Source: Schmidtea polychroa (Eukaryota). From it: a stretch of DNA of 64,000 bases. Under the pieces are notes generated by a model. The model saw nothing but the letters and a program-made list of their open reading frames with translations. It had not been told where the DNA came from and searched no databases. The DNA is taken from NCBI GenBank assembly GCA_044892525.1, contig CM097888.1, positions 58,342,001 to 58,406,000 of the forward strand, written 5' to 3'. Position numbers and translations under genes: made by a program. Shown piece after piece: positions 22,261 to 45,060 of the stretch. Positions within the stretch are counted from its first letter, which is position 1. Each line of letters opens with the position of its first letter.

Positions 22261-22280
22261 CTGATACCACTTGTGGGGAA
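22261..22280 (-). mobile_element. Possible LTR terminus (TCCCCACA) plus short PBS-like TGGTATCAG of a different element
   Basis: Minus strand ...TTCCCCACA AG TGGTATCAG; only 9 nt and the cognate tRNA is not established. Confidence 0.35.
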
Positions 22281-23346
22281 TGAACCAAAGCGATTATTAT
22301 ATTTTTTTGTCTGGGAGATTGGGACTAACTAAAAGGGTGAATAAAAATAGAAAAATAAAATAAAAATTGAAAAACGCGCGCTAAATGTTAAAAATTTAAT
22401 CCGAGAGCAGCTGCGGATTTGAAGAAACCGTTTTTGGACTTCAAATCAGATGAGGAGTACTCATTGATATGAATTTTTCCCTAGCAAGTTATGAGGCACC
22501 CGAGTAAAGCGGCTAACCACCGGACTGTAGTGTCCAACAGATTATCAGCCAAAGGACTGATGATGCTGGATCACCCAATACAAATGAATTGGGCGCACTT
22601 ATTTTTGAGTTGCTAGCGGGACTTGATACAAAAACCCGGAAGGGTAGCGAGCGAGAGAGACCCAGTTACCTACACCGAGTATTAAGGAGCCCAGTGAAAC
22701 GGTTGTGAGATGCGAGTCAACCGGTAAAAGGACTCGTATTCAATAGGCAACCAAGATTGGACCAGTTGTGAGGCGGAGGACCGAAAGTCAACTGCATATC
22801 CAATTTCCTTTTATCTTCACTAGTCGGGTGATCTGGTTCATCACTTTTGAGAATCAAGATCGAGGCGATTAGGTATTTCCGTGTTTTTTAAATCCTGATA
22901 GATAGGATTCAACGTTCAGCTCTATAGCATAAAGAGAAAGCTTTGTGGTTATACCAGATGAAATCAAAACCAATGTTTAATGCTTGAGCTATAAGCTGAT
23001 TCATTCAGAGTTTAAACAGAAGCATCTTTAGTGTATGAAGGGTTGAGAATTTCTCCCCTTATGCCTTAACCGTCAATATTATATAATAATAACACTTTGA
23101 TTTTTTTTATCACCTGGATGCATTCATATCGTTTCTATCATTCCCTCGTCACGTATTATCTACTAAAATCGTGCAGTTCATTCTTCTAGGCTCTCTATTC
23201 TCAGTCATGCCCATCCTTGGAATTACTAATGTCTTCTCAGGATTCTTCCGAACTACAATCTCTACAATTTGACCACTCATACCCTTCAGCCTATTCCCTT
23301 TACTTGCGGATTCTACCAACTCATATTCCTGTTCCAACCTTGATCC

Positions 23347-23915
23347 TGATAATAAGACAATATACGCTGTGATTTATTTTCCTAAATGGTAATGCATGAA
23401 TAAATAATTAAGGAGAAAAGAGAACGTCAGATTCTTACGAAATTATTTTATTTATAATAATACTTCATACATATTATTAGGATTCTCATCCGTGAGAACA
23501 TCCGTTTTCAAATCACTAAATAATTCCATAAATTTTATTCAATAAATTATATACTCAAAAACTTGTCTCTTCTTAAATTTGTTATTCTAAGAATCTTTCA
23601 ACTTCCTCATATCCCCCTCCTTAAGAAATTTTTTAAGTTTTTCCACGTTTCTTTCAATCTTTTTACCATTCTCGTTTCTTAAAATATATCGTCTGTCATG
23701 CACTTTCTCGATCACTTTATATGGTCCCTCATATCTGTCCTGGCTTTTGTTGCGTGTTTCTACTTTTACTAACACATCTTCACCTATTTCAAATTTCCTC
23801 CTTGTTTGTTCTTGTTCTTTCTATACCTATTTTTCTTTTGACCCGTACCATTTCTCCCTGCTAATCTTTTTTCCAAAAACTATCTCTGCGGGCTTTTTGG
23901 AAATAGTGTATGAAA
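23347..23915 (-). mobile_element. Gypsy-type integrase C-terminal remnant plus PPT plus ~260-bp LTR-like segment (repeated in every unit)
   Basis: KPAEIVFGKKI..KFEIGEDVLVK..DRYEGPYKVIEK (GPY/F motif), then PPT AAGGAGGGGGA and TGAGG...TTATCA. Confidence 0.75.
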
Positions 23916-23999
23916 TCACAATGGACGAGAGGAGAATTAGCCGATCTTGGTCCCGTCACCAGGACTGGACGCGAGCCAGGACCCGGCATAGGTTAAAGC

Positions 24000-24240
24000 A
24001 GAACCCATAAATGACGAGCTGTACGAAGTTTACATACAAGTTAGGCAAGGGGTAAATGTGACAGTGACCCTGACTACGCTGCATGGAAGCCCAACTTTGT
24101 GTCATAGAACTCGGAAATCCTACTGAGGAAGCAGAAGCGGAGTGAGACATGACTGGGCTAATCAACGGGACTTACTACGTGACAAGGCAGACACCACCCC
24201 AGAAGCACGGACGCCCCCGAAAATACCTTAAAAGGGGATG
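24000..24240 (+). mobile_element. 3' end of a second retroelement, opposite orientation (repeated in every unit)
   Basis: Ends ..PPQKHGRPRKYLKRG* (AT-hook-like GRPRK), overlapping the PPT-like AAAAGGGGA followed by TG at 24239. Confidence 0.45.
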
Positions 24241-24739
24241 AACTCCCAATGGAAATTGCATTGACTCGTGTTAATCCTCGACGTCATTTAGATTTTTATT
24301 TCGTTATCTACCTAACAATATTAGTTTTATCGTTTCTTTTCGTTATTTACTTAATAATATCAATTAGATATTTGAAATTAAATTTTATATAATTTATTTA
24401 TTCATTATTACTTATATATTATTTTTTATTATTAAACGTAAGATTTACAATCCAGGATAAGGTTCGCATCGCGTGTGTTTAGTTTATTATTATTTATAAA
24501 TTGTTTTATTAGATAAATTGTACTAATTGTGTTGAAGGTCAAATAATTTAATTCTTATATCTAATTTCATCCTTCAGAGTTTTAAAGGTTATGAATTTTA
24601 TATTTTAATATGTATTAATGAAATCTTTACAAAATTATAGATAGAAAAGTAATAAGGAAATTTATTTTCATTTTAATATTTAATCTATTAATGTAATTTT
24701 TGATTATTACAATCAATTTATTTTAGGTTTCTAATTGAC

Positions 24740-25531
24740 ATGAGTCAAATTGAATTTAAACAGACTTTAAAATTATCCAAAAATATTTTAGTAATTACTG
24801 GTGCTGGAATTAGTGCTGATAGTGGCATTCCGACATTTCGTGGTTCTCGAGCTCTTCAATGGAGAAATTATGAATCATCTAGCCTTGCTACATTATCAAT
24901 GTTTTTGAAAAATCCGTCTCTTGTTTGGGAATTTTATCATTTTCGTCGCGAAATCTGTTTGAAAGCCAATCCCAATGCTGCTCATATTGCATTATCGAAA
25001 TTTGAGATGAAATGTAAAAATGAAAATAAACAATTCTCACTTATCACACAAAATGTTGACGGTCTTCATCGACGAGCCGGTTCGGAAAATATAATTCCTA
25101 TTCACGGTGAGATATTTGAAACGAAATGTATGAAATGTAAGGATGTGAAAGAAAATTTCAATAGTCCTATTTGTGAAGGATTGCGAGATAAGGGGGATCC
25201 TAACTCGGATGAAAACTCTCATATTCCCGAGGAAAGTCTTCCTCGATGTGAATCTTGTCGGGGATTGTTACGCCCAAATGTTGTTTGGTTTGGTGAAAAT
25301 CTGCGCATTGATAATTTAGAAAAATCATATGACGCAATCAATAAATGTGACTTGTGCATTGTAGTTGGAACTTCTGGAATAGTGAATCCGGTCGCTTCGT
25401 TCCCATATCAAGTAATTGATAGAGGCATTCCCGTTGCTGAGTTCAATGTTGAATCGACCGATATTTCAGACAAAGTTAAATATTTTTTTAGAGGCGCTGC
25501 TTCGTCCATATTGCCTTCATTGCTTGAATAA
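24740..25531 (+). CDS. SIRT5: NAD-dependent deacylase, class III sirtuin (SIRT5-like), copy 1
   Basis: GAGISADSGIPTFRG, WEFYHFRR (Y66/R69 correspond to human Y102/R105), QNVDGLH, catalytic H122, CxxC..CxxC, RPNVVWFGE; intronless 263 aa. Confidence 0.95.
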   Translation: MSQIEFKQTLKLSKNILVITGAGISADSGIPTFRGSRALQWRNYESSSLATLSMFLKNPSLVWEFYHFRREICLKANPNAAHIALSKFEMKCKNENKQFSLITQNVDGLHRRAGSENIIPIHGEIFETKCMKCKDVKENFNSPICEGLRDKGDPNSDENSHIPEESLPRCESCRGLLRPNVVWFGENLRIDNLEKSYDAINKCDLCIVVGTSGIVNPVASFPYQVIDRGIPVAEFNVESTDISDKVKYFFRGAASSILPSLLE

Positions 25532-28500
25532 TTTTTCATTATTGATTACTATTTTTATTGAATAACCAGTTTCCTTAAATGATTATTTTAAACAACTGTC
25601 TTGACTATATTTAGACATTTATTTTTTAATTTGGAGAATTTTTAACTAATAATAACTATGTATACCGTATATAATATTTCCATAGCATTTATATATAATA
25701 TTTGCCGATTATGGATACAAGAGTAGTACTTAAAAAAAGTATCAAGTCAATTTGTGATGGCCAACATATTATTTACACTTTGTGTAATAAAATAGCAAAT
25801 GCATGTGCGCGTTTTTTTAGTTTCTTGGCACTTTAATCAACTTTAGGCTTGGAATAGGTTGACTGTGCCCATTTCTCTTTCAAGCGCGTGCCCTCGGTAA
25901 CTTTATTGTATCGACGTCCATTTCTAAATTCTGAGGACCTTACATCATTCCCCGTTATCAACTGTTTATTGTAAGTCAGGTTAAGGTTTGTCAGATTTCA
26001 AGTACAGTCGGTTTAACCTTTGTGAGACGTCAGAATATATTACAATAAGGTAATTTATAGATTGTGAATATCATACTAAAATTTCTCGTTTCTCCTTCCT
26101 TGTTGGTCACCTTTATCTGATACTTCAGTTAGTGTTTTAGTCAACTGGTATTGATCCTACCTCTACATTATCATTATCAGCCTGAGACTGACATGATTGA
26201 AGAGTCATGAGAGAAACAAAAAAATTTACTCCAAGACAAATTAAAAAATTAATAATTCTTCGTTGAGTTTATTGTAATTGTTGATATCGTCTGGAAATCA
26301 TTTTACGGTGTTTGAGGAAATATATTCAACGTTTAGTACCTGAAGTCCAAATTTAGTTTACGAAGTTGAATTATTGCTTGAAAGGGTTGTCGCCGTAGTC
26401 GTTGTGTTTTACTGGAGTTGCTTTTCTTGGTACGCTTTCGGTCGGGGTCGGCACTAGTTGATACAACTATCTTGGGAACCATCCATTCAATTGTAATATG
26501 ATGACAGCAGTTTACAAAAGAATATTTAAAATCATTGGCTGACGCATTTAGTTATCATTAATGGGTAGAATAGATATATAGTCATTTAAATGGATTTTGT
26601 TAAATAAAATGGAATTCTTGTGTTTAAATATCGATGATTAAGGATTCAATTATAATATTATATAGAAATTTGATAATTTCTTCAATGGTTTTCCAATTTT
26701 TTTCATCCAATAAGAATTATTTTCTTAACAATTGAAAGATGAATATCATCAAACGTTTTACTGTTATTCTAGGAAATACTTATTTTACCTAAGGATACAA
26801 CTCAAGAAAAGAATACATATTTTTTTCTAAATATTTCATTCGTCAATGACATAGTTGACTTCAAGATTTTGAAAAAGCGTAAACACACTCGCATTCCAAT
26901 TCGTATTCTGGACATTGAGGCTGGTTAATCATCAACAATCGAATAAGTTAAAGTCAATTCAACGTTATGCTCTATACCATAAAGAGAAAGCTTTGTGGTT
27001 ATACCAGATGAAATCAAAACCAATGTTTAATGCTTGAGCTATAAGCTAATTCGTTCAGAGTTTAAACAGAAGCATCTTTAGTGTATGAAGGGTTGAGAAT
27101 TTCTCCCCTTATGCCTTAGCCGTCAATGTTATATAATAATAACACTTTGATTTTTTTTATCACCTGGATGCATTCATATCGTTTCTATCATTCCCTCGTC
27201 ACGTATTATCTACTAAAATCGTGCAGTTCATTCTTCTAGGCTCTCTATTTTCAGTCATGCCCATCCTTGGAATTACTAATGTCTTCTCAGGATTCTTCCG
27301 AACTACAATCTCTACAATTTGACCACTCATACCCTTCAGCCTATTCCCTTTACTTGCGGATTCTACCAACTCATATTCCTGTTCCAACCTTGATCCTGAT
27401 AATAAGACAATATACGTTGTGATTTATTTTCCTAAATGGTAATGCATGAATAAATAATTAAGGAGAAAAGAGAACGTCAGATTCTTACGAAATTATTTTA
27501 TTTATAATAATACTTCATACATATTATTAGGATTCTCATCCGTGAGAACATCCGTTTTCAAATCACTAAATAATTCCATAAATTTTATTCAATAAATTAT
27601 ATACTCAAAAACTTGTCTCTTCTTAAATTTGTTATTCTAAGAATCTTTCAACTTCCTCATATCCTCCTCCTTAAGAAATTTTTTAAGTTTTTCCACGTTT
27701 CTTTCAATCTTTTTACCATTCTCGTTTCTTAAAATATATCGTCTGTCATGCACTTTCTCGATCACTTTATATGGTCCCTCATATCTGTCCTGGCTTTTGT
27801 TGCGTGTTTCTACTTTTACTAACACATCTTCACCTATTTCAAATTTCCTCCTTGTTTGTTCTTCTTGTTCTTTCTATACCTATTTTTCTTTTGAACCGTA
27901 CCATTTCTCCCTGCTAATCTTTTTTCCAAAAACTATCTCTGCGGGCTTTTTGGAAATAGTGTATGAAATCACAATGGACGAGAGGAGAATTAGCCGATCT
28001 TGGTCCCGTCACCAGGACTGGACGCGAGCCAGGACCCGGCATAGGTTAAAGCAGAACCCATAAATGACGAGCTGTACGAAGTTTACATACAAGTTAGGCA
28101 AGGGGTAAATGTGACAGTGACCCTGACTACGCTGCATGGAAGCCCAACTTTGTGTCATAGAACTCGGAAATCCTACTGAGGGAGCAGAAGCGGAGTGAGA
28201 CATGACTGGGCTAATCAACGGGACTTACTACGTGACAAGGCAGACACCACCCCAGAAGCACGGACGCCCCCGAAAATACCTTAAAAGGGGATGAACTCCC
28301 AATGGAAATTGCATTGACTCGTGTTAATCCTCGACGTCATTTAGATTTTTGTTTCGTTATCTACCTAACAATATTAGTTTTATCGTTTCTTTTCGTTATT
28401 TACTTAATAATATCAATTAGATATTTGAAATTAAATTTTATATAATTTATTTATTCATTATTACTTATACATTATTTTTTATTATTAAACGTAAGATTTA

Positions 28501-28792
28501 CAATCCAGGATAAGGTTCGCATCGCGTGTGTTTAGTTTATTATTATTTATAAATTGTTTTATTAGATAAATTGTACTAATTGTGTTGAAGGTCAAATAAT
28601 TTAATTCTTATATCTAATTTCATCCTTCAGAGTTTTAAAGGTTATGAATTTTATATTTTAATATGTATTAATGAAATCTTTACAAAATTATAGATAGAAA
28701 AGTAATAAGGAAATGTATTTTCATTTTAATATTTAATCTATTAATGTAATTTTTGATTATTACAATCAATTTATTTTAGGTTTCTAATTGAC

Positions 28793-29584
28793 ATGAGTCA
28801 AATTGAATTTAAACAGACTTTAAAATTATCCAAAAATATTTTAGTAATTACTGGTGCTGGAATTAGTGCTGATAGTGGCATTCCGACATTTCGTGGTTCT
28901 CGAGCTCTTCAATGGAGAAATTATGAATCATCTAGCCTTGCTACATTATCAATGTTTTTGAAAAATCCGTCTCTTGTTTGGGAATTTTATCATTTTCGTC
29001 GCGAAATCTGTTTGAAAGCCAATCCCAATGCTGCTCATATTGCATTATCGAAATTTGAGATGAAATGTAAAAATGAAAATAAACAATTCTCACTTATCAC
29101 ACAAAATGTTGACGGTCTTCATCGACGAGCCGGTTCGGAAAATATAATTCCTATTCACGGTGAGATATTTGAAACGAAATGTATGAAATGTAAGGATGTG
29201 AAAGAAAATTTCAATAGTCCTATTTGTGAAGGATTGCGAGATAAGGGGGATCCTAACTCGGATGAAAACTCTCATATTCCCGAGGAAAGTCTTCCTCGAT
29301 GTGAATCTTGTCGGGGATTGTTACGCCCAAATGTTGTTTGGTTTGGTGAAAATCTGCGCATTGATAATTTAGAAAAATCATATGACGCAATCAATAAATG
29401 TGACTTGTGCATTGTAGTTGGAACTTCTGGAATAGTGAATCCGGTCGCTTCGTTCCCATATCAAGTAATTGATAGAGGCATTCCCGTTGCTGAGTTCAAT
29501 GTTGAATCGACCGATATTTCAGACAAAGTTAAATATTTTTTTAGAGGCGCTGCTTCGTCCATATTGCCTTCATTGCTTGAATAA
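28793..29584 (+). CDS. SIRT5: SIRT5-like sirtuin, copy 2
   Basis: Protein identical to copy 1. Confidence 0.95.
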   Translation: MSQIEFKQTLKLSKNILVITGAGISADSGIPTFRGSRALQWRNYESSSLATLSMFLKNPSLVWEFYHFRREICLKANPNAAHIALSKFEMKCKNENKQFSLITQNVDGLHRRAGSENIIPIHGEIFETKCMKCKDVKENFNSPICEGLRDKGDPNSDENSHIPEESLPRCESCRGLLRPNVVWFGENLRIDNLEKSYDAINKCDLCIVVGTSGIVNPVASFPYQVIDRGIPVAEFNVESTDISDKVKYFFRGAASSILPSLLE

Positions 29585-32500
29585 TTTTTCATTATTGATT
29601 ACTATTTTTATTGAATAACCAGTTTCCTTAAATGATTATTTTAAACAACTGTCTTGACTATATTTAGACATTTATTTTTTAATTTGGAGAATTTTTAACT
29701 AATAATAACTATGTATACCGTATATAATATTTCCATAGCATTTATATATAATATTTGCCGATTATGGATACAAGAGTAGTACTTAAAAAAAGTATCAAGT
29801 CAATTTGTGATGGCCAACATATTATTTACACTTTGTGTAATAAAATAGCAAATGCATGTGCGCGTTTTTTTAGTTTTTTGGCACTTTAATCAACTTTAGG
29901 CTTGGAATAGGTTGACTGTGCCCATTTCTCTTTCAAGCGCGTGCCCTCGGTAACTTTATTGTATCGACGTCCATTTCTAAATTCTGAGGACCTTACATCA
30001 TTCCCCGTTATCAACTGTTTATTGTAAGTCAGGTTAAGGTTTGTCAGATTTCAAGTACAGTCGGTTTAACCTTTGTGAGACGTCAGAATATATTACAATA
30101 AGGTAATTTATAGATTGTGAATATCATACTAAAATTTCTCGTTTCTCCTTCCTTGTTGGTCACCTTTATCTGATACTTCAGTTAGTGTTTTAGTCAACTG
30201 GTATTGATCCTACCTCTACATTATCATTATCAGCCTGAGACTGACATGATTGAAGAGTCATGAGAGAAACAAAAAAATTTACTCCAAGACAAATTAAAAA
30301 ATTAATAATTCTTCGTTGAGTTTATTGTAATTGTTGATATCGTCTGGAAATCATTTTACGGTGTTTGAGGAAATATATTCAACGTTTAGTACCTGAAGTC
30401 CAAATTTAGTTTACGAAGTTGAATTATTGCTTGAAAGGGTTGTCGCCGTAGTCGTTGTGTTTTACTGGAGTTGCTTTTCTTGGTACGCTTTCGGTCGGGG
30501 TCGGCACTAGTTGATACAACTATCTTGGGAACCATCCATTCAATTGTAATATGATGACAGCAGTTTACAAAAGAATATTTAAAATCATTGGCTGACGCAT
30601 TTAGTTATCATTAATGGGTAGAATAGATATATAGTCATTTAAATGGATTTTGTTAAATAAAATGGAATTCTTGTGTTTAAATATCGATGATTAAGGATTC
30701 AATTATAATATTATATAGAAATTTGATAATTTCTTCAATGGTTTTCCAATTTTTTTCATCCAATAAGAATTATTTTCTTAACAATTGAAAGATGAATATC
30801 ATCAAACGTTTTACTGTTATTCTAGGAAATACTTATTTTACCTAAGGATACAACTCAAGAAAAGAATACATATTTTTTTCTAAATATTTCATTCGTCAAT
30901 GACATAGTTGACTTCAAGATTTTGAAAAAGCGTAAACACACTCGCATTCCAATTCGTATTCTGGACATTGAGGCTGGTTAATCATCAACAATCGAATAAG
31001 TTAAAGTCAATTCAACGTTATGCTCTATACCATAAAGAGAAAGCTTTGTGGTTATACCAGATGAAATCAAAACCAATGTTTAATGCTTGAGCTATAAGCT
31101 AATTCGTTCAGAGTTTAAACAGAAGCATCTTTAGTGTATGAAGGGTTGAGAATTTCTCCCCTTATGCCTTAGCCGTCAATGTTATATAATAATAACACTT
31201 TGATTTTTTTTTATCACCTGGATGCATTCATATCGTTTCTATCATTCCCTCGTCACGTATTATCTACTAAAATCGTGCAGTTCATTCTTCTAGGCTCTCT
31301 ATTTTCAGTCATGCCCATCCTTGGAATTACTAATGTCTTCTCAGGATTCTTCCGAACTACAATCTCTACAATTTGACCACTCATACCCTTCAGCCTATTC
31401 CCTTTACTTGCGGATTCTACCAACTCATATTCCTGTTCCAACCTTGATCCTGATAATAAGACAATATACGTTGTGATTTATTTTCCTAAATGGTAATGCA
31501 TGAATAAATAATTAAGGAGAAAAGAGAACGTCAGATTCTTACGAAATTATTTTATTTATAATAATACTTCATACATATTATTAGGATTCTCATCCGTGAG
31601 AACATCCGTTTTCAAATCACTAAATAATTCCATAAATTTTATTCAATAAATTATATACTCAAAAACTTGTCTCTTCTTAAATTTGTTATTCTAAGAATCT
31701 TTCAACTTCCTCATATCCTCCTCCTTAAGAAATTTTTTAAGTTTTTCCACGTTTCTTTCAATCTTTTTACCATTCTCGTTTCTTAAAATATATCGTCTGT
31801 CATGCACTTTCTCGATCACTTTATATGGTCCCTCATATCTGTCCTGGCTTTTGTTGCGTGTTTCTACTTTTACTAACACATCTTCACCTATTTCAAATTT
31901 CCTCCTTGTTTGTTCTTCTTGTTCTTTCTATACCTATTTTTCTTTTGAACCGTACCATTTCTCCCTGCTAATCTTTTTTCCAAAAACTATCTCTGCGGGC
32001 TTTTTGGAAATAGTGTATGAAATCACAATGGACGAGAGGAGAATTAGCCGATCTTGGTCCCGTCACCAGGACTGGACGCGAGCCAGGACCCGGCATAGGT
32101 TAAAGCAGAACCCATAAATGACGAGCTGTACGAAGTTTACATACAAGTTAGGCAAGGGGTAAATGTGACAGTGACCCTGACTACGCTGCATGGAAGCCCA
32201 ACTTTGTGTCATAGAACTCGGAAATCCTACTGAGGGAGCAGAAGCGGAGTGAGACATGACTGGGCTAATCAACGGGACTTACTACGTGACAAGGCAGACA
32301 CCACCCCAGAAGCACGGACGCCCCCGAAAATACCTTAAAAGGGGATGAACTCCCAATGGAAATTGCATTGACTCGTGTTAATCCTCGACGTCATTTAGAT
32401 TTTTGTTTCGTTATCTACCTAACAATATTAGTTTTATCGTTTCTTTTCGTTATTTACTTAATAATATCAATTAGATATTTGAAATTAAATTTTATATAAT

Positions 32501-32846: not shown

Positions 32847-33638
32847 ATGAGTCAAATTGAATTTAAACAGACTTTAAAATTATCCAAAAATATTTTAGTA
32901 ATTACTGGTGCTGGAATTAGTGCTGATAGTGGCATTCCGACATTTCGTGGTTCTCGAGCTCTTCAATGGAGAAATTATGAATCATCTAGCCTTGCTACAT
33001 TATCAATGTTTTTGAAAAATCCGTCTCTTGTTTGGGAATTTTATCATTTTCGTCGCGAAATCTGTTTGAAAGCCAATCCCAATGCTGCTCATATTGCATT
33101 ATCGAAATTTGAGATGAAATGTGAAAATGAAAATAAACAATTCTCACTTATCACACAAAATGTTGACGGTCTTCATCGACGAGCCGGTTCGGAAAATATA
33201 ATTCCTATTCACGGTGAGATATTTGAAACGAAATGTATGAAATGTAAGGATGTGAAAGAAAATTTCAATAGTCCTATTTGTGAAGGATTGCGAGATAAGG
33301 GGGATCCTAACTCGGATGAAAACTCTCATATTCCCGAGGAAAGTCTTCCTCGATGTGAATCTTGTCGGGGATTGTTACGCCCAAATGTTGTTTGGTTTGG
33401 TGAAAATCTGCGCATTGATAATTTAGAAAAATCATATGACGCAATCAATAAATGTGACTTGTGCATTGTAGTTGGAACTTCTGGAATAGTGAATCCGGTC
33501 GCTTCGTTCCCATATCAAGTAATTGATAGAGGCATTCCCGTTGCTGAGTTCAATGTTGAATCGACCGATATTTCAGACAAAGTTAAATATTTTTTTAGAG
33601 GCGCTGCTTCGTCCATATTGCCTTCATTGCTTGAATAA
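32847..33638 (+). CDS. SIRT5: SIRT5-like sirtuin, copy 3 (K93E)
   Basis: One substitution versus copy 1. Confidence 0.95.
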   Translation: MSQIEFKQTLKLSKNILVITGAGISADSGIPTFRGSRALQWRNYESSSLATLSMFLKNPSLVWEFYHFRREICLKANPNAAHIALSKFEMKCENENKQFSLITQNVDGLHRRAGSENIIPIHGEIFETKCMKCKDVKENFNSPICEGLRDKGDPNSDENSHIPEESLPRCESCRGLLRPNVVWFGENLRIDNLEKSYDAINKCDLCIVVGTSGIVNPVASFPYQVIDRGIPVAEFNVESTDISDKVKYFFRGAASSILPSLLE

Positions 33639-36600
33639 TTTTTCATTATTGATTACTATTTTTATTGAATAACCAGTTTCCTTAAATGATTATTTTAAAC
33701 AACTGTCTTGACTATATTTAGACATTTATTTTTTAATTTGGAGAATTTTTAACTAATAATAACTATGTATACCGTATATAATATTTCCATAGCATTTATA
33801 TATAATATTTGCCGATTATGGATACAAGAGTAGTACTTAAAAAAAGTATCAAGTCAATTTGTGATGGCCAACATATTATTTACACTTTGTGTAATAAAAT
33901 AGCAAATGCATGTGCGCGTTTTTTTAGTTTTTTGGCACTTTAATCAACTTTAGGCTTGGAATAGGTTGACTGTGCCCATTTCTCTTTCAAGCGCGTGCCC
34001 TCGGTAACTTTATTGTATCGACGTCCATTTCTAAATTCTGAGGACCTTACATCATTCCCCGTTATCAACTGTTTATTGTAAGTCAGGTTAAGGTTTGTCA
34101 GATTTCAAGTACAGTCGGTTTAACCTTTGTGAGACGTCAGAATATATTACAATAAGGTAATTTATAGATTGTGAATATCATACTAAAATTTCTCGTTTCT
34201 CCTTCCTTGTTGGTCACCTTTATCTGATACTTCAGTTAGTGTTTTAGTCAACTGGTATTGATCCTACCTCTACATTATCATTATCAGCCTGAGACTGACA
34301 TGATTGAAGAGTCATGAGAGAAACAAAAAAATTTACTCCAAGACAAATTAAAAAATTAATAATTCTTCGTTGAGTTTATTGTAATTGTTGATATCGTCTG
34401 GAAATCATTTTACGGTGTTTGAGGAAATATATTCAACGTTTAGTACCTGAAGTCCAAATTTAGTTTACGAAGTTGAATTATTGCTTGAAAGGGTTGTCGC
34501 CGTAGTCGTTGTGTTTTACTGGAGTTGCTTTTCTTGGTACGCTTTCGGTCGGGGTCGGCACTAGTTGATACAACTATCTTGGGAACCATCCATTCAATTG
34601 TAATATGATGACAGCAGTTTACAAAAGAATATTTAAAATCATTGGCTGACGCATTTAGTTATCATTAATGGGTAGAATAGATATATAGTCATTTAAATGG
34701 ATTTTGTTAAATAAAATGGAATTCTTGTGTTTAAATATCGATGATTAAGGATTCAATTATAATATTATATAGAAATTTGATAATTTCTTCAATGGTTTTC
34801 CAATTTTTTTCATCCAATAAGAATTATTTTCTTAACAATTGAAAGATGAATATCATCAAACGTTTTACTGTTATTCTAGGAAATACTTATTTTACCTAAG
34901 GATACAACTCAAGAAAAGAATACATATTTTTTTCTAAATATTTCATTCGTCAATGACATAGTTGACTTCAAGATTTTGAAAAAGCGTAAACACACTCGCA
35001 TTCCAATTCGTATTCTGGACATTGAGGCTGGTTAATCATCAACAATCGAATAAGTTAAAGTCAATTCAACGTTATGCTCTATACCATAAAGAGAAAGCTT
35101 TGTGGTTATACCAGATGAAATCAAAACCAATGTTTAATGCTTGAGCTATAAGCTAATTCGTTCAGAGTTTAAACAGAAGCATCTTTAGTGTATGAAGGGT
35201 TGAGAATTTCTCCCCTTATGCCTTAGCCGTCAATGTTATATAATAATAACACTTTGATTTTTTTTTATCACCTGGATGCATTCATATCGTTTCTATCATT
35301 CCCTCGTCACGTATTATCTACTAAAATCGTGCAGTTCATTCTTCTAGGCTCTCTATTTTCAGTCATGCCCATCCTTGGAATTACTAATGTCTTCTCAGGA
35401 TTCTTCCGAACTACAATCTCTACAATTTGACCACTCATACCCTTCAGCCTATTCCCTTTACTTGCGGATTCTACCAACTCATATTCCTGTTCCAACCTTG
35501 ATCCTGATAATAAGACAATATACGTTGTGATTTATTTTCCTAAATGGTAATGCATGAATAAATAATTAAGGAGAAAAGAGAACGTCAGATTCTTACGAAA
35601 TTATTTTATTTATAATAATACTTCATACATATTATTAGGATTCTCATCCGTGAGAACATCCGTTTTCAAATCACTAAATAATTCCATAAATTTTATTCAA
35701 TAAATTATATACTCAAAAACTTGTCTCTTCTTAAATTTGTTATTCTAAGAATCTTTCAACTTCCTCATATCCTCCTCCTTAAGAAATTTTTTAAGTTTTT
35801 CCACGTTTCTTTCAATCTTTTTACCATTCTCGTTTCTTAAAATATATCGTCTGTCATGCACTTTCTCGATCACTTTATATGGTCCCTCATATCTGTCCTG
35901 GCTTTTGTTGCGTGTTTCTACTTTTACTAACACATCTTCACCTATTTCAAATTTCCTCCTTGTTTGTTCTTCTTGTTCTTTCTATACCTATTTTTCTTTT
36001 GAACCGTACCATTTCTCCCTGCTAATCTTTTTTCCAAAAACTATCTCTGCGGGCTTTTTGGAAATAGTGTATGAAATCACAATGGACGAGAGGAGAATTA
36101 GCCGATCTTGGTCCCGTCACCAGGACTGGACGCGAGCCAGGACCCGGCATAGGTTAAAGCAGAACCCATAAATGACGAGCTGTACGAAGTTTACATACAA
36201 GTTAGGCAAGGGGTAAATGTGACAGTGACCCTGACTACGCTGCATGGAAGCCCAACTTTGTGTCATAGAACTCGGAAATCCTACTGAGGGAGCAGAAGCG
36301 GAGTGAGACATGACTGGGCTAATCAACGGGACTTACTACGTGACAAGGCAGACACCACCCCAGAAGCACGGACGCCCCCGAAAATACCTTAAAAGGGGAT
36401 GAACTCCCAATGGAAATTGCATTGACTCGTGTTAATCCTCGACGTCATTTAGATTTTTGTTTCGTTATCTACCTAACAATATTAGTTTTATCGTTTCTTT
36501 TCGTTATTTACTTAATAATATCAATTAGATATTTGAAATTAAATTTTATATAATTTATTTATTCATTATTACTTATACATTATTTTTTATTATTAAACGT

Positions 36601-36900
36601 AAGATTTACAATCCAGGATAAGGTTCGCATCGCGTGTTATTAGTTTATTATCATTTATAAATTGTTTTATTAGATAAATTGTACTAATTGTGTTGAAGGT
36701 CAAATAATTTAATTCTTATATCTAATTTCATCCTTCAGAGTTTTAAAGGTTATGAATTTTATATTTTAATATGTATTAATGAAATCTTTACAAAATTATA
36801 GATAGAAAAGTAATAAGGAAATGTATTTTCATTTTAATATTTAATCTATTAATGTAATTTTTGATTATTACAATCAATTTATTTTAGGTTTCTAATTGAC

Positions 36901-37692
36901 ATGAGTCAAATTGAATTTAAACAGACTTTAAAATTATCCAAAAATATTTTAGTAATTACTGGTGCTGGAATTAGTGCTGATAGTGGCATTCCGACATTTC
37001 GTGGTTCTCGAGCTCTTCAATGGAGAAATTATGAATCATCTAGCCTTGCTACATTATCAATGTTTTTGAAAAATCCGTCTCTTGTTTGGGAATTTTATCA
37101 TTTTCGTCGCGAAATCTGTTTGAAAGCCAATCCCAATGCTGCTCATATTGCATTATCGAAATTTGAGATGAAATGTGAAAATGAAAATAAACAATTCTCA
37201 CTTATCACACAAAATGTTGACGGTCTTCATCGACGAGCCGGTTCGGAAAATATAATTCCTATTCACGGTGAGATATTTGAAACGAAATGTATGAAATGTA
37301 AGGATGTGAAAGAAAATTTCAATAGTCCTATTTGTGAAGGATTGCGAGATAAGGGGGATCCTAACTCGGATGAAAACTCTCATATTCCCGAGGAAAGTCT
37401 TCCTCGATGTGAATCTTGTCGGGGATTGTTACGCCCAAATGTTGTTTGGTTTGGTGAAAATCTGCGCATTGATAATTTAGAAAAATCATATGACGCAATC
37501 AATAAATGTGACTTGTGCATTGTAGTTGGAACTTCTGGAATAGTGAATCCGGTCGCTTCGTTCCCATATCAAGTAATTGATAGAGGCATTCCCGTTGCTG
37601 AGTTCAATGTTGAATCGACCGATATTTCAGACAAAGTTAAATATTTTTTTAGAGGCGCTGCTTCGTCCATATTGCCTTCATTGCTTGAATAA
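36901..37692 (+). CDS. SIRT5: SIRT5-like sirtuin, copy 4 (K93E)
   Basis: Protein identical to copy 3. Confidence 0.95.
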   Translation: MSQIEFKQTLKLSKNILVITGAGISADSGIPTFRGSRALQWRNYESSSLATLSMFLKNPSLVWEFYHFRREICLKANPNAAHIALSKFEMKCENENKQFSLITQNVDGLHRRAGSENIIPIHGEIFETKCMKCKDVKENFNSPICEGLRDKGDPNSDENSHIPEESLPRCESCRGLLRPNVVWFGENLRIDNLEKSYDAINKCDLCIVVGTSGIVNPVASFPYQVIDRGIPVAEFNVESTDISDKVKYFFRGAASSILPSLLE

Positions 37693-40600
37693 TTTTTCAT
37701 TATTGATTACTATTTTTATTGAATAACCAGTTTCCTTAAATGATTATTTTAAACAACTGTCTTGACTATATTTAGACATTTATTTTTTAATTTGGAGAAT
37801 TTTTAACTAATAATAACTATGTATACCGTATATAATATTTCCATAGCATTTATATATAATATTTGCCGATTATGGATACAAGAGTAGTACTTAAAAAAAG
37901 TATCAAGTCAATTTGTGATGGCCAACATATTATTTACACTTTGTGTAATAAAATAGCAAATGCATGTGCGCGTTTTTTTAGTTTTTTGGCACTTTAATCA
38001 ACTTTAGGCTTGGAATAGGTTGACTGTGCCCATTTCTCTTTCAAGCGCGTGCCCTCGGTAACTTTATTGTATCGACGTCCATTTCTAAATTCTGAGGACC
38101 TTACATCATTCCCCGTTATCAACTGTTTATTGTAAGTCAGGTTAAGGTTTGTCAGATTTCAAGTACAGTCGGTTTAACCTTTGTGAGACGTCAGAATATA
38201 TTACAATAAGGTAATTTATAGATTGTGAATATCATACTAAAATTTCTCGTTTCTCCTTCCTTGTTGGTCACCTTTATCTGATACTTCAGTTAGTGTTTTA
38301 GTCAACTGGTATTGATCCTACCTCTACATTATCATTATCAGCCTGAGACTGACATGATTGAAGAGTCATGAGAGAAACAAAAAAATTTACTCCAAGACAA
38401 ATTAAAAAATTAATAATTCTTCGTTGAGTTTATTGTAATTGTTGATATCGTCTGGAAATCATTTTACGGTGTTTGAGGAAATATATTCAACGTTTAGTAC
38501 CTGAAGTCCAAATTTAGTTTACGAAGTTGAATTATTGCTTGAAAGGGTTGTCGCCGTAGTCGTTGTGTTTTACTGGAGTTGCTTTTCTTGGTACGCTTTC
38601 GGTCGGGGTCGGCACTAGTTGATACAACTATCTTGGGAACCATCCATTCAATTGTAATATGATGACAGCAGTTTACAAAAGAATATTTAAAATCATTGGC
38701 TGACGCATTTAGTTATCATTAATGGGTAGAATAGATATATAGTCATTTAAATGGATTTTGTTAAATAAAATGGAATTCTTGTGTTTAAATATCGATGATT
38801 AAGGATTCAATTATAATATTATATAGAAATTTGATAATTTCTTCAATGGTTTTCCAATTTTTTTCATCCAATAAGAATTATTTTCTTAACAATTGAAAGA
38901 TGAATATCATCAAACGTTTTACTGTTATTCTAGGAAATACTTATTTTACCTAAGGATACAACTCAAGAAAAGAATACATATTTTTTTCTAAATATTTCAT
39001 TCGTCAATGACATAGTTGACTTCAAGATTTTGAAAAAGCGTAAACACACTCGCATTCCAATTCGTATTCTGGACATTGAGGCTGGTTAATCATCAACAAT
39101 CGAATAAGTTAAAGTCAATTCAACGTTATGCTCTATACCATAAAGAGAAAGCTTTGTGGTTATACCAGATGAAATCAAAACCAATGTTTAATGCTTGAGC
39201 TATAAGCTAATTCGTTCAGAGTTTAAACAGAAGCATCTTTAGTGTATGAAGGGTTGAGAATTTCTCCCCTTATGCCTTAGCCGTCAATGTTATATAATAA
39301 TAACACTTTGATTTTTTTTTATCACCTGGATGCATTCATATCGTTTCTATCATTCCCTCGTCACGTATTATCTACTAAAATCGTGCAGTTCATTCTTCTA
39401 GGCTCTCTATTTTCAGTCATGCCCATCCTTGGAATTACTAATGTCTTCTCAGGATTCTTCCGAACTACAATCTCTACAATTTGACCACTCATACCCTTCA
39501 GCCTATTCCCTTTACTTGCGGATTCTACCAACTCATATTCCTGTTCCAACCTTGATCCTGATAATAAGACAATATACGTTGTGATTTATTTTCCTAAATG
39601 GTAATGCATGAATAAATAATTAAGGAGAAAAGAGAACGTCAGATTCTTACGAAATTATTTTATTTATAATAATACTTCATACATATTATTAGGATTCTCA
39701 TCCGTGAGAACATCCGTTTTCAAATCACTAAATAATTCCATAAATTTTATTCAATAAATTATATACTCAAAAACTTGTCTCTTCTTAAATTTGTTATTCT
39801 AAGAATCTTTCAACTTCCTCATATCCTCCTCCTTAAGAAATTTTTTAAGTTTTTCCACGTTTCTTTCAATCTTTTTACCATTCTCGTTTCTTAAAATATA
39901 TCGTCTGTCATGCACTTTCTCGATCACTTTATATGGTCCCTCATATCTGTCCTGGCTTTTGTTGCGTGTTTCTACTTTTACTAACACATCTTCACCTATT
40001 TCAAATTTCCTCCTTGTTTGTTCTTCTTGTTCTTTCTATACCTATTTTTCTTTTGAACCGTACCATTTCTCCCTGCTAATCTTTTTTCCAAAAACTATCT
40101 CTGCGGGCTTTTTGGAAATAGTGTATGAAATCACAATGGACGAGAGGAGAATTAGCCGATCTTGGTCCCGTCACCAGGACTGGACGCGAGCCAGGACCCG
40201 GCATAGGTTAAAGCAGAACCCATAAATGACGAGCTGTACGAAGTTTACATACAAGTTAGGCAAGGGGTAAATGTGACAGTGACCCTGACTACGCTGCATG
40301 GAAGCCCAACTTTGTGTCATAGAACTCGGAAATCCTACTGAGGGAGCAGAAGCGGAGTGAGACATGACTGGGCTAATCAACGGGACTTACTACGTGACAA
40401 GGCAGACACCACCCCAGAAGCACGGACGCCCCCGAAAATACCTTAAAAGGGGATGAACTCCCAATGGAAATTGCATTGACTCGTGTTAATCCTCGACGTC
40501 ATTTAGATTTTTGTTTCGTTATCTACCTAACAATATTAGTTTTATCGTTTCTTTTCGTTATTTACTTAATAATATCAATTAGATATTTGAAATTAAATTT

Positions 40601-40954
40601 TATATAATTTATTTATTCATTATTACTTATACATTATTTTTTATTATTAAACGTAAGATTTACAATCCAGGATAAGGTTCGCATCGCGTGTTATTAGTTT
40701 ATTATCATTTATAAATTGTTTTATTAGATAAATTGTACTAATTGTGTTGAAGGTCAAATAATTTAATTCTTATATCTAATTTCATCCTTCAGAGTTTTAA
40801 AGGTTATGAATTTTATATTTTAATATGTATTAATGAAATCTTTACAAAATTATAGATAGAAAAGTAATAAGGAAATGTATTTTCATTTTAATATTTAATC
40901 TATTAATGTAATTTTTGATTATTACAATCAATTTATTTTAGGTTTCTAATTGAC

Positions 40955-41746
40955 ATGAGTCAAATTGAATTTAAACAGACTTTAAAATTATCCAAAAATA
41001 TTTTAGTAATTACTGGTGCTGGAATTAGTGCTGATAGTGGCATTCCGACATTTCGTGGTTCTCGAGCTCTTCAATGGAGAAATTATGAATCATCTAGCCT
41101 TGCTACATTATCAATGTTTTTGAAAAATCCGTCTCTTGTTTGGGAATTTTATCATTTTCGTCGCGAAATCTGTTTGAAAGCCAATCCCAATGCTGCTCAT
41201 ATTGCATTATCGAAATTTGAGATGAAATGTAAAAATGAAAATAAACAATTCTCACTTATCACACAAAATGTTGACGGTCTTCATCGACGAGCCGGTTCGG
41301 AAAATATAATTCCTATTCACGGTGAGATATTTGAAACGAAATGTATGAAATGTAAGGATGTGAAAGAAAATTTCAATAGTCCTATTTGTGAAGGATTGCG
41401 AGATAAGGGGGATCCTAACTCGGATGAAAACTCTCATATTCCCGAGGAAAGTCTTCCTCGATGTGAATCTTGTCGGGGATTGTTACGCCCAAATGTTGTT
41501 TGGTTTGGTGAAAATCTGCGCATTGATAATTTAGAAAAATCATATGACGCAATCAATAAATGTGACTTGTGCATTGTAGTTGGAACTTCTGGAATAGTGA
41601 ATCCGGTCGCTTCGTTCCCATATCAAGTAATTGATAGAGGCATTCCCGTTGCTGAGTTCAATGTTGAATCGACCGATATTTCAGACAAAGTTAAATATTT
41701 TTTTAGAGGCGCTGCTTCGTCCATATTGCCTTCATTGCTTGAATAA
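40955..41746 (+). CDS. SIRT5: SIRT5-like sirtuin, copy 5
   Basis: Protein identical to copy 1. Confidence 0.95.
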   Translation: MSQIEFKQTLKLSKNILVITGAGISADSGIPTFRGSRALQWRNYESSSLATLSMFLKNPSLVWEFYHFRREICLKANPNAAHIALSKFEMKCKNENKQFSLITQNVDGLHRRAGSENIIPIHGEIFETKCMKCKDVKENFNSPICEGLRDKGDPNSDENSHIPEESLPRCESCRGLLRPNVVWFGENLRIDNLEKSYDAINKCDLCIVVGTSGIVNPVASFPYQVIDRGIPVAEFNVESTDISDKVKYFFRGAASSILPSLLE

Positions 41747-43772
41747 TTTTTCATTATTGATTACTATTTTTATTGAATAACCAGTTTCCTTAAATGATTA
41801 TTTTAAACAACTGTCTTGACTATATTTAGACATTTATTTTTTAATTTGGAGAATTTTTAACTAATAATAACTATGTATACCGTATATAATATTTCCATAG
41901 CATTTATATATAATATTTGCCGATTATGGATACAAGAGTAGTACTTAAAAAAAGTATCAAGTCAATTTGTGATGGCCAACATATTATTTACACTTTGTGT
42001 AATAAAATAGCAAATGCATGTGCGCGTTTTTTTAGTTTCTTGGCACTTTAATCAACTTTAGGCTTGGAATAGGTTGACTGTGCCCATTTCTCTTTCAAGC
42101 GCGTGCCCTCGGTAACTTTATTGTATCGACGTCCATTTCTAAATTCTGAGGACCTTACATCATTCCCCGTTATCAACTGTTTATTGTAAGTCAGGTTAAG
42201 GTTTGTCAGATTTCAAGTACAGTCGGTTTAACCTTTGTGAGACGTCAGAATATATTACAATAAGGTAATTTATAGATTGTGAATATCATACTAAAATTTC
42301 TCGTTTCTCCTTCCTTGTTGGTCACCTTTATCTGATACTTCAGTTAGTGTTTTAGTCAACTGGTATTGATCCTACCTCTACATTATCATTATCAGCCTGA
42401 GACTGACATGATTGAAGAGTCATGAGAGAAACAAAAAAATTTACTCCAAGACAAATTAAAAAATTAATAATTCTTCGTTGAGTTTATTGTAATTGTTGAT
42501 ATCGTCTGGAAATCATTTTACGGTGTTTGAGGAAATATATTCAACGTTTAGTACCTGAAGTCCAAATTTAGTTTACGAAGTTGAATTATTGCTTGAAAGG
42601 GTTGTCGCCGTAGTCGTTGTGTTTTACTGGAGTTGCTTTTCTTGGTACGCTTTCGGTCGGGGTCGGCACTAGTTGATACAACTATCTTGGGAACCATCCA
42701 TTCAATTGTAATATGATGACAGCAGTTTACAAAAGAATATTTAAAATCATTGGCTGACGCATTTAGTTATCATTAATGGGTAGAATAGATATATAGTCAT
42801 TTAAATGGATTTTGTTAAATAAAATGGAATTCTTGTGTTTAAATATCGATGATTAAGGATTCAATTATAATATTATATAGAAATTTGATAATTTCTTCAA
42901 TGGTTTTCCAATTTTTTTCATCCAATAAGAATTATTTTCTTAACAATTGAAAGATGAATATCATCAAACGTTTTACTGTTATTCTAGGAAATACTTATTT
43001 TACCTAAGGATACAACTCAAGAAAAGAATAAATATTTTTTTCTAAATATTTCATTCGTCAATGACATAGTTGACTTCAAGATTTTGAAAAAGCGTAAACA
43101 CACTCGCATTCCAATTCGTATTCTGGACATTGAGGCTGGTTAATCATCAACAATCGAATAAGTTAAAGTCAATTCAACGTTATGCTCTATACCATAAAGA
43201 GAAAGCTTTGTGGTTATACCAGATGAAATCAAAACCAATGTTTAATGCTTGAGCTATAAGCTAATTCGTTCAGAGTTTAAACAGAAGCATCTTTAGTGTA
43301 TGAAGGGTTGAGAATTTCTCCCCTTATGCCTTAGCCGTCAATGTTATATAATAATAACACTTTGATTTTTTTTATCACCTGGATGCATTCATATCGTTTC
43401 TATCATTCCCTCGTCACGTATTATCTACTAAAATCGTGCAGTTCATTCTTCTAGGCTCTCTATTTTCAGTCATGCCCATCCTTGGAATTACTAATGTCTT
43501 CTCAGGATTCTTCCGAACTACAATCTCTACAATTTGACCACTCATACCCTTCAGCCTATTCCCTTTACATGCGGATTCTACCAACTCATATTCCTGTTCC
43601 AACTTCGATCCTGATAAAACTGAAAAAGTTTTATAGAACTTTTAAAAATTTTATATCCTTTTATTTTCAATTTACATTTCACCTTATTTGAAGTTTAAAT
43701 TCTTGAAAATTTTTATTTTTATATATTTATTTAAACCAATGAGAGTGCAGGAAATTGCTTCATTTCATTTAA

Positions 43773-45011: not shown

Positions 45012-45060
45012 TGATATATTCTTTGATTCAAAAGGCTTTTCTTATCATTTACTAGTTTAA

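What the first reader, a model, noticed from the sequence alone, without database searches (positions are those of the whole stretch)
22907..43617. Five-copy tandem amplification of an intact SIRT5 gene
Seen: five complete ORFs with no disabling change and only one amino-acid difference; each has the same ~1.8 kb upstream and ~1.4 kb downstream context. Known: SIRT5 is normally single-copy in animals, and Y/R in the WEFYxxRR motif confers desuccinylase/demalonylase/deglutarylase activity. Inference: a very recent dosage amplification of an NAD+-consuming metabolic regulator, possibly copy-number polymorphic; true copy number could exceed five if the assembly is collapsed.
Basis: partly seen in the sequence, partly recalled or inferred. 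Interest (0 to 1): 0.75.

Follow-up and report, generated by a model that had tools for sequence, protein, structure and literature searches.

The report
Five-copy tandem SIRT5 gene array
A flatworm-type genome carries its only SIRT5 (protein desuccinylase) gene as five almost identical, intact, transcribed head-to-tail copies; this is a tidy but ordinary case of recent local gene amplification, and the copy number could not be checked against raw reads.

Summary
Window 22907-43617 is 5.11 head-to-tail copies of a 4054-bp unit. Units 2-5 differ from one another at 0-6 positions, and unit 1 differs from them at 19-24. Each unit carries an intact 263-aa ORF, and the only protein difference is K93E in copies 3 and 4.

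The protein is a true animal SIRT5 orthologue. It matches solved SIRT5 structures at E 2e-83, and its best hit is the Dugesia japonica sirtuin-5-like protein (65% identity, full length). The succinyl-recognition Tyr and Arg, the catalytic His and the four zinc Cys are all present.

No other SIRT5 locus exists in this 781-Mb genome, so the array is the gene itself, not extra copies of a parent elsewhere.

New here: contigs from two RNA-like public runs show a spliced transcript with a 139-nt GT..AG intron in the 5' UTR. The exons and splice sites are identical in all five units.

The array has the layout S-R-S-R-S-R-S-R-S-R-S. The outer 446-bp S copies are the more diverged ones and the inner S copies are chimeric, which fits unequal crossing-over.

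Only assembled contigs of public runs were available, so copy number, polymorphism between strains and any dosage effect are untested.

The scan's notes list other recent tandem amplifications in this genome, which I did not check. Verdict: new member of a known kind, modest interest.

The parts
22907..43617 (+). Whole tandem array: 5.11 copies of a 4054-bp unit with the layout S-R-S-R-S-R-S-R-S-R-S (S = 446 bp, R = about 3608 bp)
22907..23352 (+). Outer left S copy (S_A). Its first 172 bp differ at 7 sites from all other S copies. It abuts the end of a dispersed repeat at 22906.
43172..43617 (+). Outer right S copy (S_B). It differs from all other S copies at 3 sites within its last 50 bp. 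About 155 bp of unique sequence follow it.
26957..27402 (+). Internal junction S copy, B-like on the left and A-like on the right. Identical chimeras lie at 31010-31456, 35064-35510 and 39118-39564; those three carry one extra T in a T run.
24503..25569 (+). SIRT5 gene copy 1, transcribed span as seen in RNA-like contigs: exon 1 from at least 24503 to 24587, intron 24588-24726, exon 2 from 24727 to at least 25569. CDS 24740-25531 (263 aa, K93).
24588..24726 (+). 139-nt GT..AG intron in the 5' UTR. It is present in all five units with identical splice sites; one difference inside it (24662) is private to unit 1.
28556..29622 (+). SIRT5 gene copy 2 (CDS 28793-29584, K93)
32610..33676 (+). SIRT5 gene copy 3 (CDS 32847-33638, E93)
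36664..37730 (+). SIRT5 gene copy 4 (CDS 36901-37692, E93). Unit 4 is identical to unit 3 over all 4054 bp.
40718..41784 (+). SIRT5 gene copy 5 (CDS 40955-41746, K93)
27492..27951 (-). Fragment of an abundant dispersed retroelement, 93-96% identical to many genomic copies, with a weak match to an integrase C-terminal SH3 domain. It lies about 0.6-1 kb upstream of the gene in every unit; the unit 2 copy is given here.
   Evidence: very high contig depth at 23500-23899 and 27500-28099
20800..22906 (.). Left flank: a dispersed repeat (more than 40 copies at 91-93% identity) that ends exactly at the array's left edge
43773..45008 (-). Right flank: a 1.24-kb DNA transposon with 51-bp terminal inverted repeats and an IS1595/ISXO2-type DDE transposase. 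More than 20 copies at 93-98% identity exist elsewhere in the genome.

Best explanation
This is a genuine, evolutionarily recent tandem amplification of the genome's only SIRT5 orthologue, and the genome is most likely that of a triclad planarian. A 4054-bp segment contains a compact gene: exon 1, a 139-nt intron in the 5' UTR, and one coding exon for a 263-aa class III sirtuin. The segment also holds about 1.6 kb of sequence upstream of the transcript's observed 5' end.

The segment was duplicated by unequal crossing-over, most simply between two 446-bp direct repeats that flanked a single-copy gene. Further unequal exchanges between whole units then expanded it to five copies. Every unit has identical exons and splice sites, so each copy is presumably a working transcription unit.

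The expected consequence is more SIRT5 mRNA and more NAD+-dependent lysine desuccinylase, demalonylase and deglutarylase. Shown here: the array, the intact copies, the SIRT5 identity and catalytic residues, the absence of another SIRT5 locus, and a spliced transcript. Inferred: the crossover mechanism, that all five copies are active, and any dosage effect. Whether the amplification is adaptive or a neutral copy-number variant is open.
For: Array and copies: five 4054-bp units at 99.70-100% identity plus partial ends, with five intact 263-aa ORFs.

Structured differences between units: units 3-5 share three letters at 24477-24491 equivalents. Units 3 and 4 share K93E. Units 2-4 share T at column 2922. 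Unit 5 has one private site. Unit 1 has private changes through column 1760. This is the pattern of real, recombining copies and not of sequencing noise.

Junctions: all four internal S copies are the same chimera, with eight B-type sites on the left and three A-type sites on the right.

Identity: Pfam SIR2 at 1.5e-47. Solved SIRT5 structures at E 2e-83, against 1e-49 or weaker for archaeal and bacterial Sir2/CobB and 1e-17 for SIRT1-3. The best database hit is the 263-aa Dugesia japonica sirtuin-5-like protein at 65% identity and 100% coverage, followed by animal SIRT5 at about 50%. Y66, R69, H122 and C130/C133/C170/C173 are invariant in the alignment.

Sole locus: a six-frame search of the whole genome finds only these five copies plus two distant sirtuins at 27-31% identity, with all 15 candidates scored.

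Expression: contigs from two RNA-like runs of two different studies join 24585 to 24725 across a GT..AG gap of 139 nt and continue through the CDS to 25569.

Constraint: a diverged strain shows 2 differences in the 792-nt CDS (N15H and one synonymous change). The same 1988-nt DNA contig shows about 17 differences plus indels in about 1190 nt of flank.

Identical transcription units: exons and splice sites are the same in all five units.
Against: Copy number was not verified independently. Only assembled contigs of public runs were available, and their depth varied three-fold within one unit (472-1415 in X1), with no single-copy baseline in the stretch laid. Units 3 and 4 are identical, so the count of that unit type rests entirely on the assembler. 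No contig bridges R-end, S and R-start in one piece, so even the tandem junction has no clean independent support. The RNA contigs come from a strain about 1% diverged and cannot show which or how many copies are transcribed. The chimeric-junction pattern is also what stronger homogenisation of inner copies than of edge copies would produce, so crossover between two pre-existing repeats is not proven. The full 446-bp S exists nowhere else in the genome, so its own origin is unexplained.
Confidence: 0.8

Rival explanations
1. Assembly artefact. The real genome has one copy, or fewer than five, and the assembler over-expanded the repeat. Alternatively it has more than five and the assembler collapsed them.
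For: No raw reads could be laid. Units 3 and 4 are identical over 4054 bp, so their number is the hardest for an assembler to fix. In run X1 no contig carries the letters private to unit 1 or to S_A (table 3).
Against: The five units are not identical. They carry shared, nested variants, which an artefactual expansion of one template would not create. At every copy-variant site that is listed, the collapsed X1 contigs carry a letter held by the majority of the assembled units: 24129 G, 24298 G, 24417 C, 24477-8 TA, 25016 A, 25824 T. No single assembled unit has that combination across both contigs, as expected if several unit types are in the reads. Assemblers usually collapse such repeats and seldom expand them (general knowledge).
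Confidence: 0.12
2. The unit is a mobile or retro-derived element that carries a captured SIRT5 gene. One form would be an LTR-like element with the 446-bp S copies as its LTRs, multiplied by LTR-LTR recombination. Another would be a retrogene that replaced an intron-bearing parent.
For: The S-R-S layout mimics LTR-internal-LTR arrays. The coding sequence has no introns. A retroelement integrase-like fragment lies inside the unit. The first 200 bp of S belong to an old dispersed repeat family.
Against: Full-length S and all of R apart from known repeat fragments occur only in this array, so the unit has never moved. The integrase-like fragment is on the opposite strand, is internally deleted, and belongs to a different, abundant family. 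No intron-bearing parent or second SIRT5 locus exists. No poly(A) remnant follows the 3' UTR. The gene does have an intron, in its 5' UTR.
Confidence: 0.05
3. The array is real but functionally neutral. It would be a transient copy-number variant in a repeat-rich, amplification-prone genome, with no adaptive dosage role.
For: Both flanks are repeat-rich. The scan's notes list several other very recent tandem amplifications in this genome, which I did not check. There are no synonymous differences among the copies, so selection on the copies cannot be measured.
Against: Nothing speaks against it directly. The CDS is conserved relative to its flanks between strains, but that would hold for a single-copy gene too.
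Confidence: 0.5

Closest known systems
Animal SIRT5 (class III sirtuin; NAD+-dependent lysine desuccinylase, demalonylase and deglutarylase), e.g. zebrafish and human SIRT5 structures 6enx, 4utn, 3rig
   Same: The full catalytic core aligns end to end at about 50% identity (E 2e-83). The acyl-carboxylate-binding Tyr and Arg (WEFYHFRRE), the catalytic His and the CxxC...CxxC zinc site are conserved.
   Different: The protein has no N-terminal mitochondrial presequence. It starts 20 residues before the GAGIS motif, and the spliced 5' UTR carries an in-frame stop just upstream. The planarian group has a one-residue insertion after FRG. The coding sequence has no introns. The gene is present as five tandem copies.
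Dugesia japonica sirtuin-5-like protein (263 aa) and unnamed close relatives P0002-P0004
   Same: Same length class (261-268 aa), same short N-terminus and same clade-specific insertion, at 63-65% identity over the full length.
   Different: Their gene copy number and genomic context are unknown. Only short contigs or a protein record are available.
Recent tandem gene amplifications and copy-number variants made by unequal crossing-over or NAHR between flanking repeats, such as amylase, opsin or insecticide-resistance esterase arrays
   Same: Head-to-tail units of constant length and near-identity, edge copies more diverged than inner ones, chimeric junction repeats, and a complete gene in each unit.
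   Different: The amplified gene is a housekeeping metabolic deacylase, not a gene facing the environment. No evidence for selection or polymorphism was obtained.
Other recent tandem amplifications noted by this scan in the same genome (five-copy F-type lectin amplicon s1-225444; 6147-bp tandem amplification s1-208204)
   Same: Same genome, similar unit sizes and copy numbers, and near-identical copies (notes not checked by me).
   Different: Different genes. The lectin amplicon is partly inverted, whereas this array is purely direct.

Membership tests
SIRT5 / class III sirtuin | Sir2 catalytic domain (Rossmann fold plus zinc module) | tested here: met
   Pfam PF02146 at E 1.5e-47, covering model positions 1-180 of 180. 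NCBIfam NAD-dependent protein deacylase subfamily at 253 bits, above its cut-off of 243.
SIRT5 / class III sirtuin | Closer to SIRT5 than to any other sirtuin class | tested here: met
   Solved SIRT5 chains at E 2e-83; archaeal and bacterial class III/U at 1e-49 or weaker; SIRT1-3 at 1e-17 or weaker. The named database hits among the best 120 are animal SIRT5 proteins or animal 'NAD-dependent protein deacylase' entries.
SIRT5 / class III sirtuin | Tyr and Arg that bind the acyl carboxylate (human Y102 and R105) | tested here: met
   Y66 and R69 are invariant in the alignment with animal SIRT5. The motif reads WEFYHFRRE here against WEFYHYRRE in the solved structures. The human numbering is from my own knowledge.
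SIRT5 / class III sirtuin | Catalytic His and four zinc-binding Cys | tested here: met
   H122, C130, C133, C170 and C173 are invariant columns.
SIRT5 / class III sirtuin | N-terminal mitochondrial targeting presequence, as in vertebrate SIRT5 | tested here: not met
   The ORF starts 20 residues before the GAGIS motif. The spliced 5' UTR has an in-frame TAA five codons upstream of the ATG. Planarian relatives are equally short. This is a feature of vertebrate SIRT5 and not a defining feature of the family, so localisation is simply unknown.
SIRT5 / class III sirtuin | NAD+-dependent desuccinylase, demalonylase or deglutarylase activity | not testable with these tools
   Needs an enzyme assay.
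Recent tandem gene amplification (copy-number gain by unequal crossing-over) | Head-to-tail units of constant period and very high identity | tested here: met
   4054-bp period and 99.70-100% identity. Pairwise differences are 0-6 among units 2-5 and 19-24 between unit 1 and the rest.
Recent tandem gene amplification (copy-number gain by unequal crossing-over) | Each unit holds a complete gene (upstream region, exons, splice sites, 3' end) | tested here: met
   Exon 1, both splice sites and exon 2 are identical in all five units except for K93E, and each unit has about 1.6 kb upstream of the transcript's 5' end. Promoter activity itself was not tested.
Recent tandem gene amplification (copy-number gain by unequal crossing-over) | Recombinant (chimeric) junction between flanking repeats | tested here: inconclusive
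   The internal S copies are B-type at 8 left sites and A-type at 3 right sites, with the switch between columns 295 and 399. Weaker homogenisation of edge copies predicts the same pattern.
Recent tandem gene amplification (copy-number gain by unequal crossing-over) | Copy number supported by independent reads (depth or spanning reads) | tested here: inconclusive
   Only assembled contigs were available. Their depth is noisy and has no single-copy baseline. The X1 contigs carry the majority letters at the copy-variant sites that are listed, which fits several unit types but does not count them.
Retrogene | Intronless copy with a poly(A) remnant or target-site duplications, plus an intron-bearing parent elsewhere | tested here: not met
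   The CDS is intronless, but a 5' UTR intron exists. No poly(A) tract follows the 3' UTR. There is no other SIRT5 locus. An ancient retro-origin with loss of the parent cannot be excluded.
LTR-element tandem array or gene captured by a mobile element | The unit or its terminal repeat occurs at other loci | tested here: not met
   Full-length S and R are found only in this array. Only short old repeat fragments inside them are dispersed.

The most novel reading that the evidence does not exclude
The SIRT5 array is a copy-number-variable, selected dosage amplification in planarians. Under this reading, strains or biotypes differ in unit number, and SIRT5 transcript level and the lysine succinylation, malonylation and glutarylation load scale with it. 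The extra, presequence-less SIRT5 would serve the animal's unusual metabolism of long starvation, shrinking and regrowth. The evidence here neither supports nor excludes this.
Probability: 0.1. Interest if true: 0.55.

Novelty: new member of a known kind. Interest (0 to 1): 0.3.

Why it matters
SIRT5 is the main remover of succinyl, malonyl and glutaryl groups from lysines, and in most animals it is a single gene. A natural five-fold amplification of the only SIRT5 gene would be a ready-made dosage series, in an animal group used to study regeneration, starvation-driven shrinking and apparent lack of ageing. That holds only if the copy number is real and varies between strains. Practically, the five identical copies matter for anyone designing RNAi, in situ probes, qPCR or genome edits against this gene, and for annotators who might merge or drop copies. 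Mechanistically the array adds nothing new. It is a standard product of unequal crossing-over in a repeat-rich genome where the scan's notes report several similar amplifications.

Tried and rejected
1. Copy number from reads. The look-up of sequencing runs failed twice as busy and then returned only assembled contigs. The single read-laying run gave one depth figure per contig. These ranged from 472 to 1415 within one unit in X1 and from 50 to 154 in X5, and both flanks are high-copy repeats, so no copy number can be derived. I considered the S:R depth ratio in X5 (about 1.1-1.3, near the 6:5 expected for five units). I rejected it as too noisy, because X1 shows the opposite trend.

2. Tandem junction in independent data. 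No contig runs R-end, S and R-start in one piece. X1 records 7 and 8 overlap across S, but de Bruijn contigs with popped bubbles cannot prove linkage.

3. Horizontal transfer from bacteria. This was suggested by the intronless 263-aa ORF and the CobB-type NCBIfam hits. I rejected it because the best hits are animal SIRT5, the transcript is GT..AG spliced and the base composition matches the host.

4. The unit as a mobile element, or S as an LTR. Rejected, because both occur only here.

5. A hidden N-terminal exon encoding a mitochondrial presequence. Rejected, because the spliced 5' UTR has an in-frame stop.

6. Other functional elements in the unit. There are no Rfam families and no tRNAs. 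The other ORFs are 88 aa or shorter and have no significant Pfam match. The exception is a sub-threshold integrase SH3 hit inside the dispersed repeat fragment.

7. Exact-sequence look-up of the K93 and E93 proteins. Neither is in the collection. The tools state that records of the window's own genome may be left out, so this says nothing about expression.

8. Literature. Four searches and one paper turned up no description of a planarian SIRT5 array or of SIRT5 tandem amplification in any animal. The library is incomplete, so this is weak evidence of novelty.

9. Whether relatives have an intronless SIRT5. The 1337-nt contig L009 of a relative cannot be classed as DNA or RNA, so this stays open.
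Full report
**Observation**

The window holds five open reading frames of 263 aa on the + strand, starting at 24740, 28793, 32847, 36901 and 40955. A BLAST of one unit against the whole window returns five complete 4054-bp copies at 99.70-100% identity. It also returns a 195-bp partial copy at the left end (22907-23101, 96.4%) and a 252-bp partial copy at the right end (43366-43617, 98.8%), and nothing else. The only difference between the five proteins is K93E (AAA to GAA) in copies 3 and 4.

**What the gene is**

- The protein matches Pfam SIR2 over the full model (E 1.5e-47). It also passes the cut-off of an NCBIfam NAD-dependent protein deacylase subfamily.
- Against solved structures, the best matches are zebrafish and human SIRT5 (E 2e-83 to 1e-79) over essentially the whole protein. 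Archaeal and bacterial Sir2/CobB proteins score 1e-49 or weaker, and SIRT1-3 score 1e-17 or weaker.
- In the large protein database the best hit is a 263-aa 'sirtuin-5-like protein' of the planarian Dugesia japonica (65% identity, 100% coverage). Three unnamed relatives at 64-65% follow, then animal SIRT5 proteins at about 50%.
- The planarian group shares a short N-terminus with no presequence and a one-residue insertion after FRG.

The host genome has 781 Mb in 1012 contigs, including four very large ones, and the window lies on C4 at 58.34-58.41 Mb. Together with about 32% G+C, this points to a triclad planarian.

**It is the only SIRT5 in the genome**

A six-frame search of the whole assembly with the protein finds the five array copies. 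Otherwise it finds only two distant sirtuin loci at 27-31% identity, and all 15 first-look candidates were scored. The array is therefore the SIRT5 locus itself, not a set of extra copies beside a parent gene.

**Gene structure and expression**

All the public runs listed as holding this stretch were available only as assembled contigs. I laid four of them, from four different studies, on 22500-28499.

- Two RNA-like runs (X8, X9) each have a contig of about 0.9 kb. It lies on 24503/24515-24585, skips 139 nt bounded by GT..AG, and continues from 24725 through the whole CDS to 25523/25569.
- From the sequence, the intron is 24588-24726, beginning GTTATG and ending TTTTAG. Exon 2 starts 13 nt before the ATG.
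- The spliced leader carries an in-frame TAA five codons upstream of the ATG, so the 263-aa product is complete and has no hidden N-terminal extension.
- The gene is thus transcribed and spliced. It is not strictly intronless, although its coding sequence is.
- Exon 1, both splice sites and exon 2 are identical in all five units apart from K93E. Each unit therefore looks like a complete transcription unit. Which copies are active cannot be told.

The RNA contigs and DNA run X5 come from a strain about 1% diverged from the assembly. Relative to the assembly they differ at 2 sites in the 792-nt CDS (N15H and a synonymous I200 change). X5's DNA contig also shows about 17 substitutions plus several indels in about 1190 nt of flanking sequence. 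That contrast is a rough sign of purifying selection on the CDS.

**Anatomy and origin of the array**

When the units are phased on the terminal overlap, the array reads S-R-S-R-S-R-S-R-S-R-S, with S = 446 bp and R about 3608 bp.

- The outer left copy S_A differs from every other S at 7 sites in its first 172 bp and at column 295.
- The outer right copy S_B differs from every other S at three sites in its last 50 bp.
- The four internal S copies are all the same: B-type on the left and A-type on the right, with the switch between columns 295 and 399.

This is what unequal crossing-over between two diverged direct repeats flanking a single-copy gene would leave (S_A and S_B differ at 11 of 446 positions). 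It agrees with another first-stage note on this window (s1-204359). The same pattern would also arise if inner copies are simply homogenised more than edge copies, so I treat the mechanism as likely and not proven.

Unit 1 carries further private changes up to column 1760, and it differs from the other units at 19-24 positions in all. Units 2-5 differ at 0-6 positions, and units 3 and 4 are identical. At the two unit-1-private sites that X5 covers and table 3 lists (24298, 24417), the diverged strain has the unit 1 letter. This suggests that units 2-5 descend from one derived copy. The history is therefore an older first duplication followed by a very recent expansion with exchanges between units.

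**Context**

- The left flank is a dispersed repeat (more than 40 copies at 91-93% identity) that ends exactly at 22906.
- The right flank has about 155 bp of unique sequence. It is followed by a 1.24-kb DNA transposon with 51-bp inverted ends and an IS1595-type transposase, then another repeat family, and then a piggyBac-type transposase ORF.
- Inside each unit, a 460-bp fragment of an abundant retroelement lies 0.6-1 kb upstream of the gene.
- The first 200 bp of S belong to an old repeat family at 89% identity or less.
- Everything else in the unit, and S at full length, exists only in this array. The unit is therefore not a mobile element.
- No Rfam family or tRNA lies in the unit.

**Is the copy number real?**

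Evidence in favour is indirect:
- The units carry nested, shared variants.
- At the copy-variant sites that are listed, the collapsed short-read contigs of run X1 carry a letter held by the majority of the assembled units.
- That combination is one that no single assembled unit has across both contigs.

Evidence of weakness:
- Units 3 and 4 are identical.
- Contig depths are too noisy to use.
- No contig spans a whole junction.

I put the chance of a materially wrong copy number at about one in eight.

**Comparison with what is known, and verdict**

The protein is a member of the SIRT5 family by every sequence criterion tested. It lacks only the vertebrate-style presequence, as its planarian relatives do. 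The array is a standard recent tandem amplification. The scan's notes list several others in this genome, for example a five-copy lectin amplicon and a 6.1-kb tandem amplification, which I did not check. The literature searches found no report of a SIRT5 array in planarians or other animals.

The claims about dosage, polymorphism and possible collapse remain untested. I rate this as a new member of a known kind, of modest interest. It would become more interesting only if copy number varies among strains and tracks acyl-lysine levels or a physiological trait.

Noticed in passing
window 43773-45008: A 1.24-kb DNA transposon with 51-bp terminal inverted repeats (43776-43826 and 44958-45008) and an IS1595/ISXO2-type DDE transposase ORF (Pfam PF12762, E 4e-17). 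More than 20 copies at 93-98% identity lie elsewhere in the genome, so the family looks recently active. It resembles the eukaryotic relatives of bacterial IS1016/IS1595 elements (Merlin-type, from memory).
   Followed up: partly
window 45744-47048 (- strand): A 434-aa ORF with a piggyBac-type transposase domain (PF13843, E 2.7e-55). The adjoining 45039-45700 belongs to a repeat family with many copies at about 94% identity.
   Followed up: partly
window 24740-25531 and relatives P0001-P0004: Planarian SIRT5 proteins (261-268 aa) start right at the catalytic core with no mitochondrial presequence. Here an in-frame stop in the spliced 5' UTR rules out a longer form. Where this SIRT5 acts in the cell is therefore open.
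   Followed up: partly
window 24197-26177 as seen in runs X5, X8 and X9: Public runs under the same species label fall into two groups. One is near-identical to the assembly (X1-X4, 92-94% of sampled words). The other is about 1% diverged (X5, X6 and the RNA-like runs), with N15H and one synonymous change in SIRT5 and an indel-rich stretch at 25598-25614.
   Followed up: partly
window 20800-22906: A dispersed repeat (more than 40 copies at 91-93% identity over 2.1 kb) ends exactly at the first base of the array. The array's left boundary and this element's end therefore coincide. I could not decide whether the element's insertion truncated an older, longer homology.
   Followed up: partly
window 9533-9853 and 55582-55954: Two short tandem arrays: a 40/81-bp period with 8 or 4 copies at 80-86% matches, and a 21/126-bp period with about 18 or 3 copies at 87-93% matches.
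   Followed up: no
window 4397-4599: A run of 203 N (assembly gap or masked stretch). I left it untouched.
   Followed up: no
G000:C2:145371124-145371708 and G000:C4:77744229-77747169: These are the only other sirtuin-like matches to the SIRT5 query in the genome (27-31% identity), presumably sirtuins of other classes. The C4 locus matches in two pieces with one stop between them, as an intron-bearing gene would.
   Followed up: no
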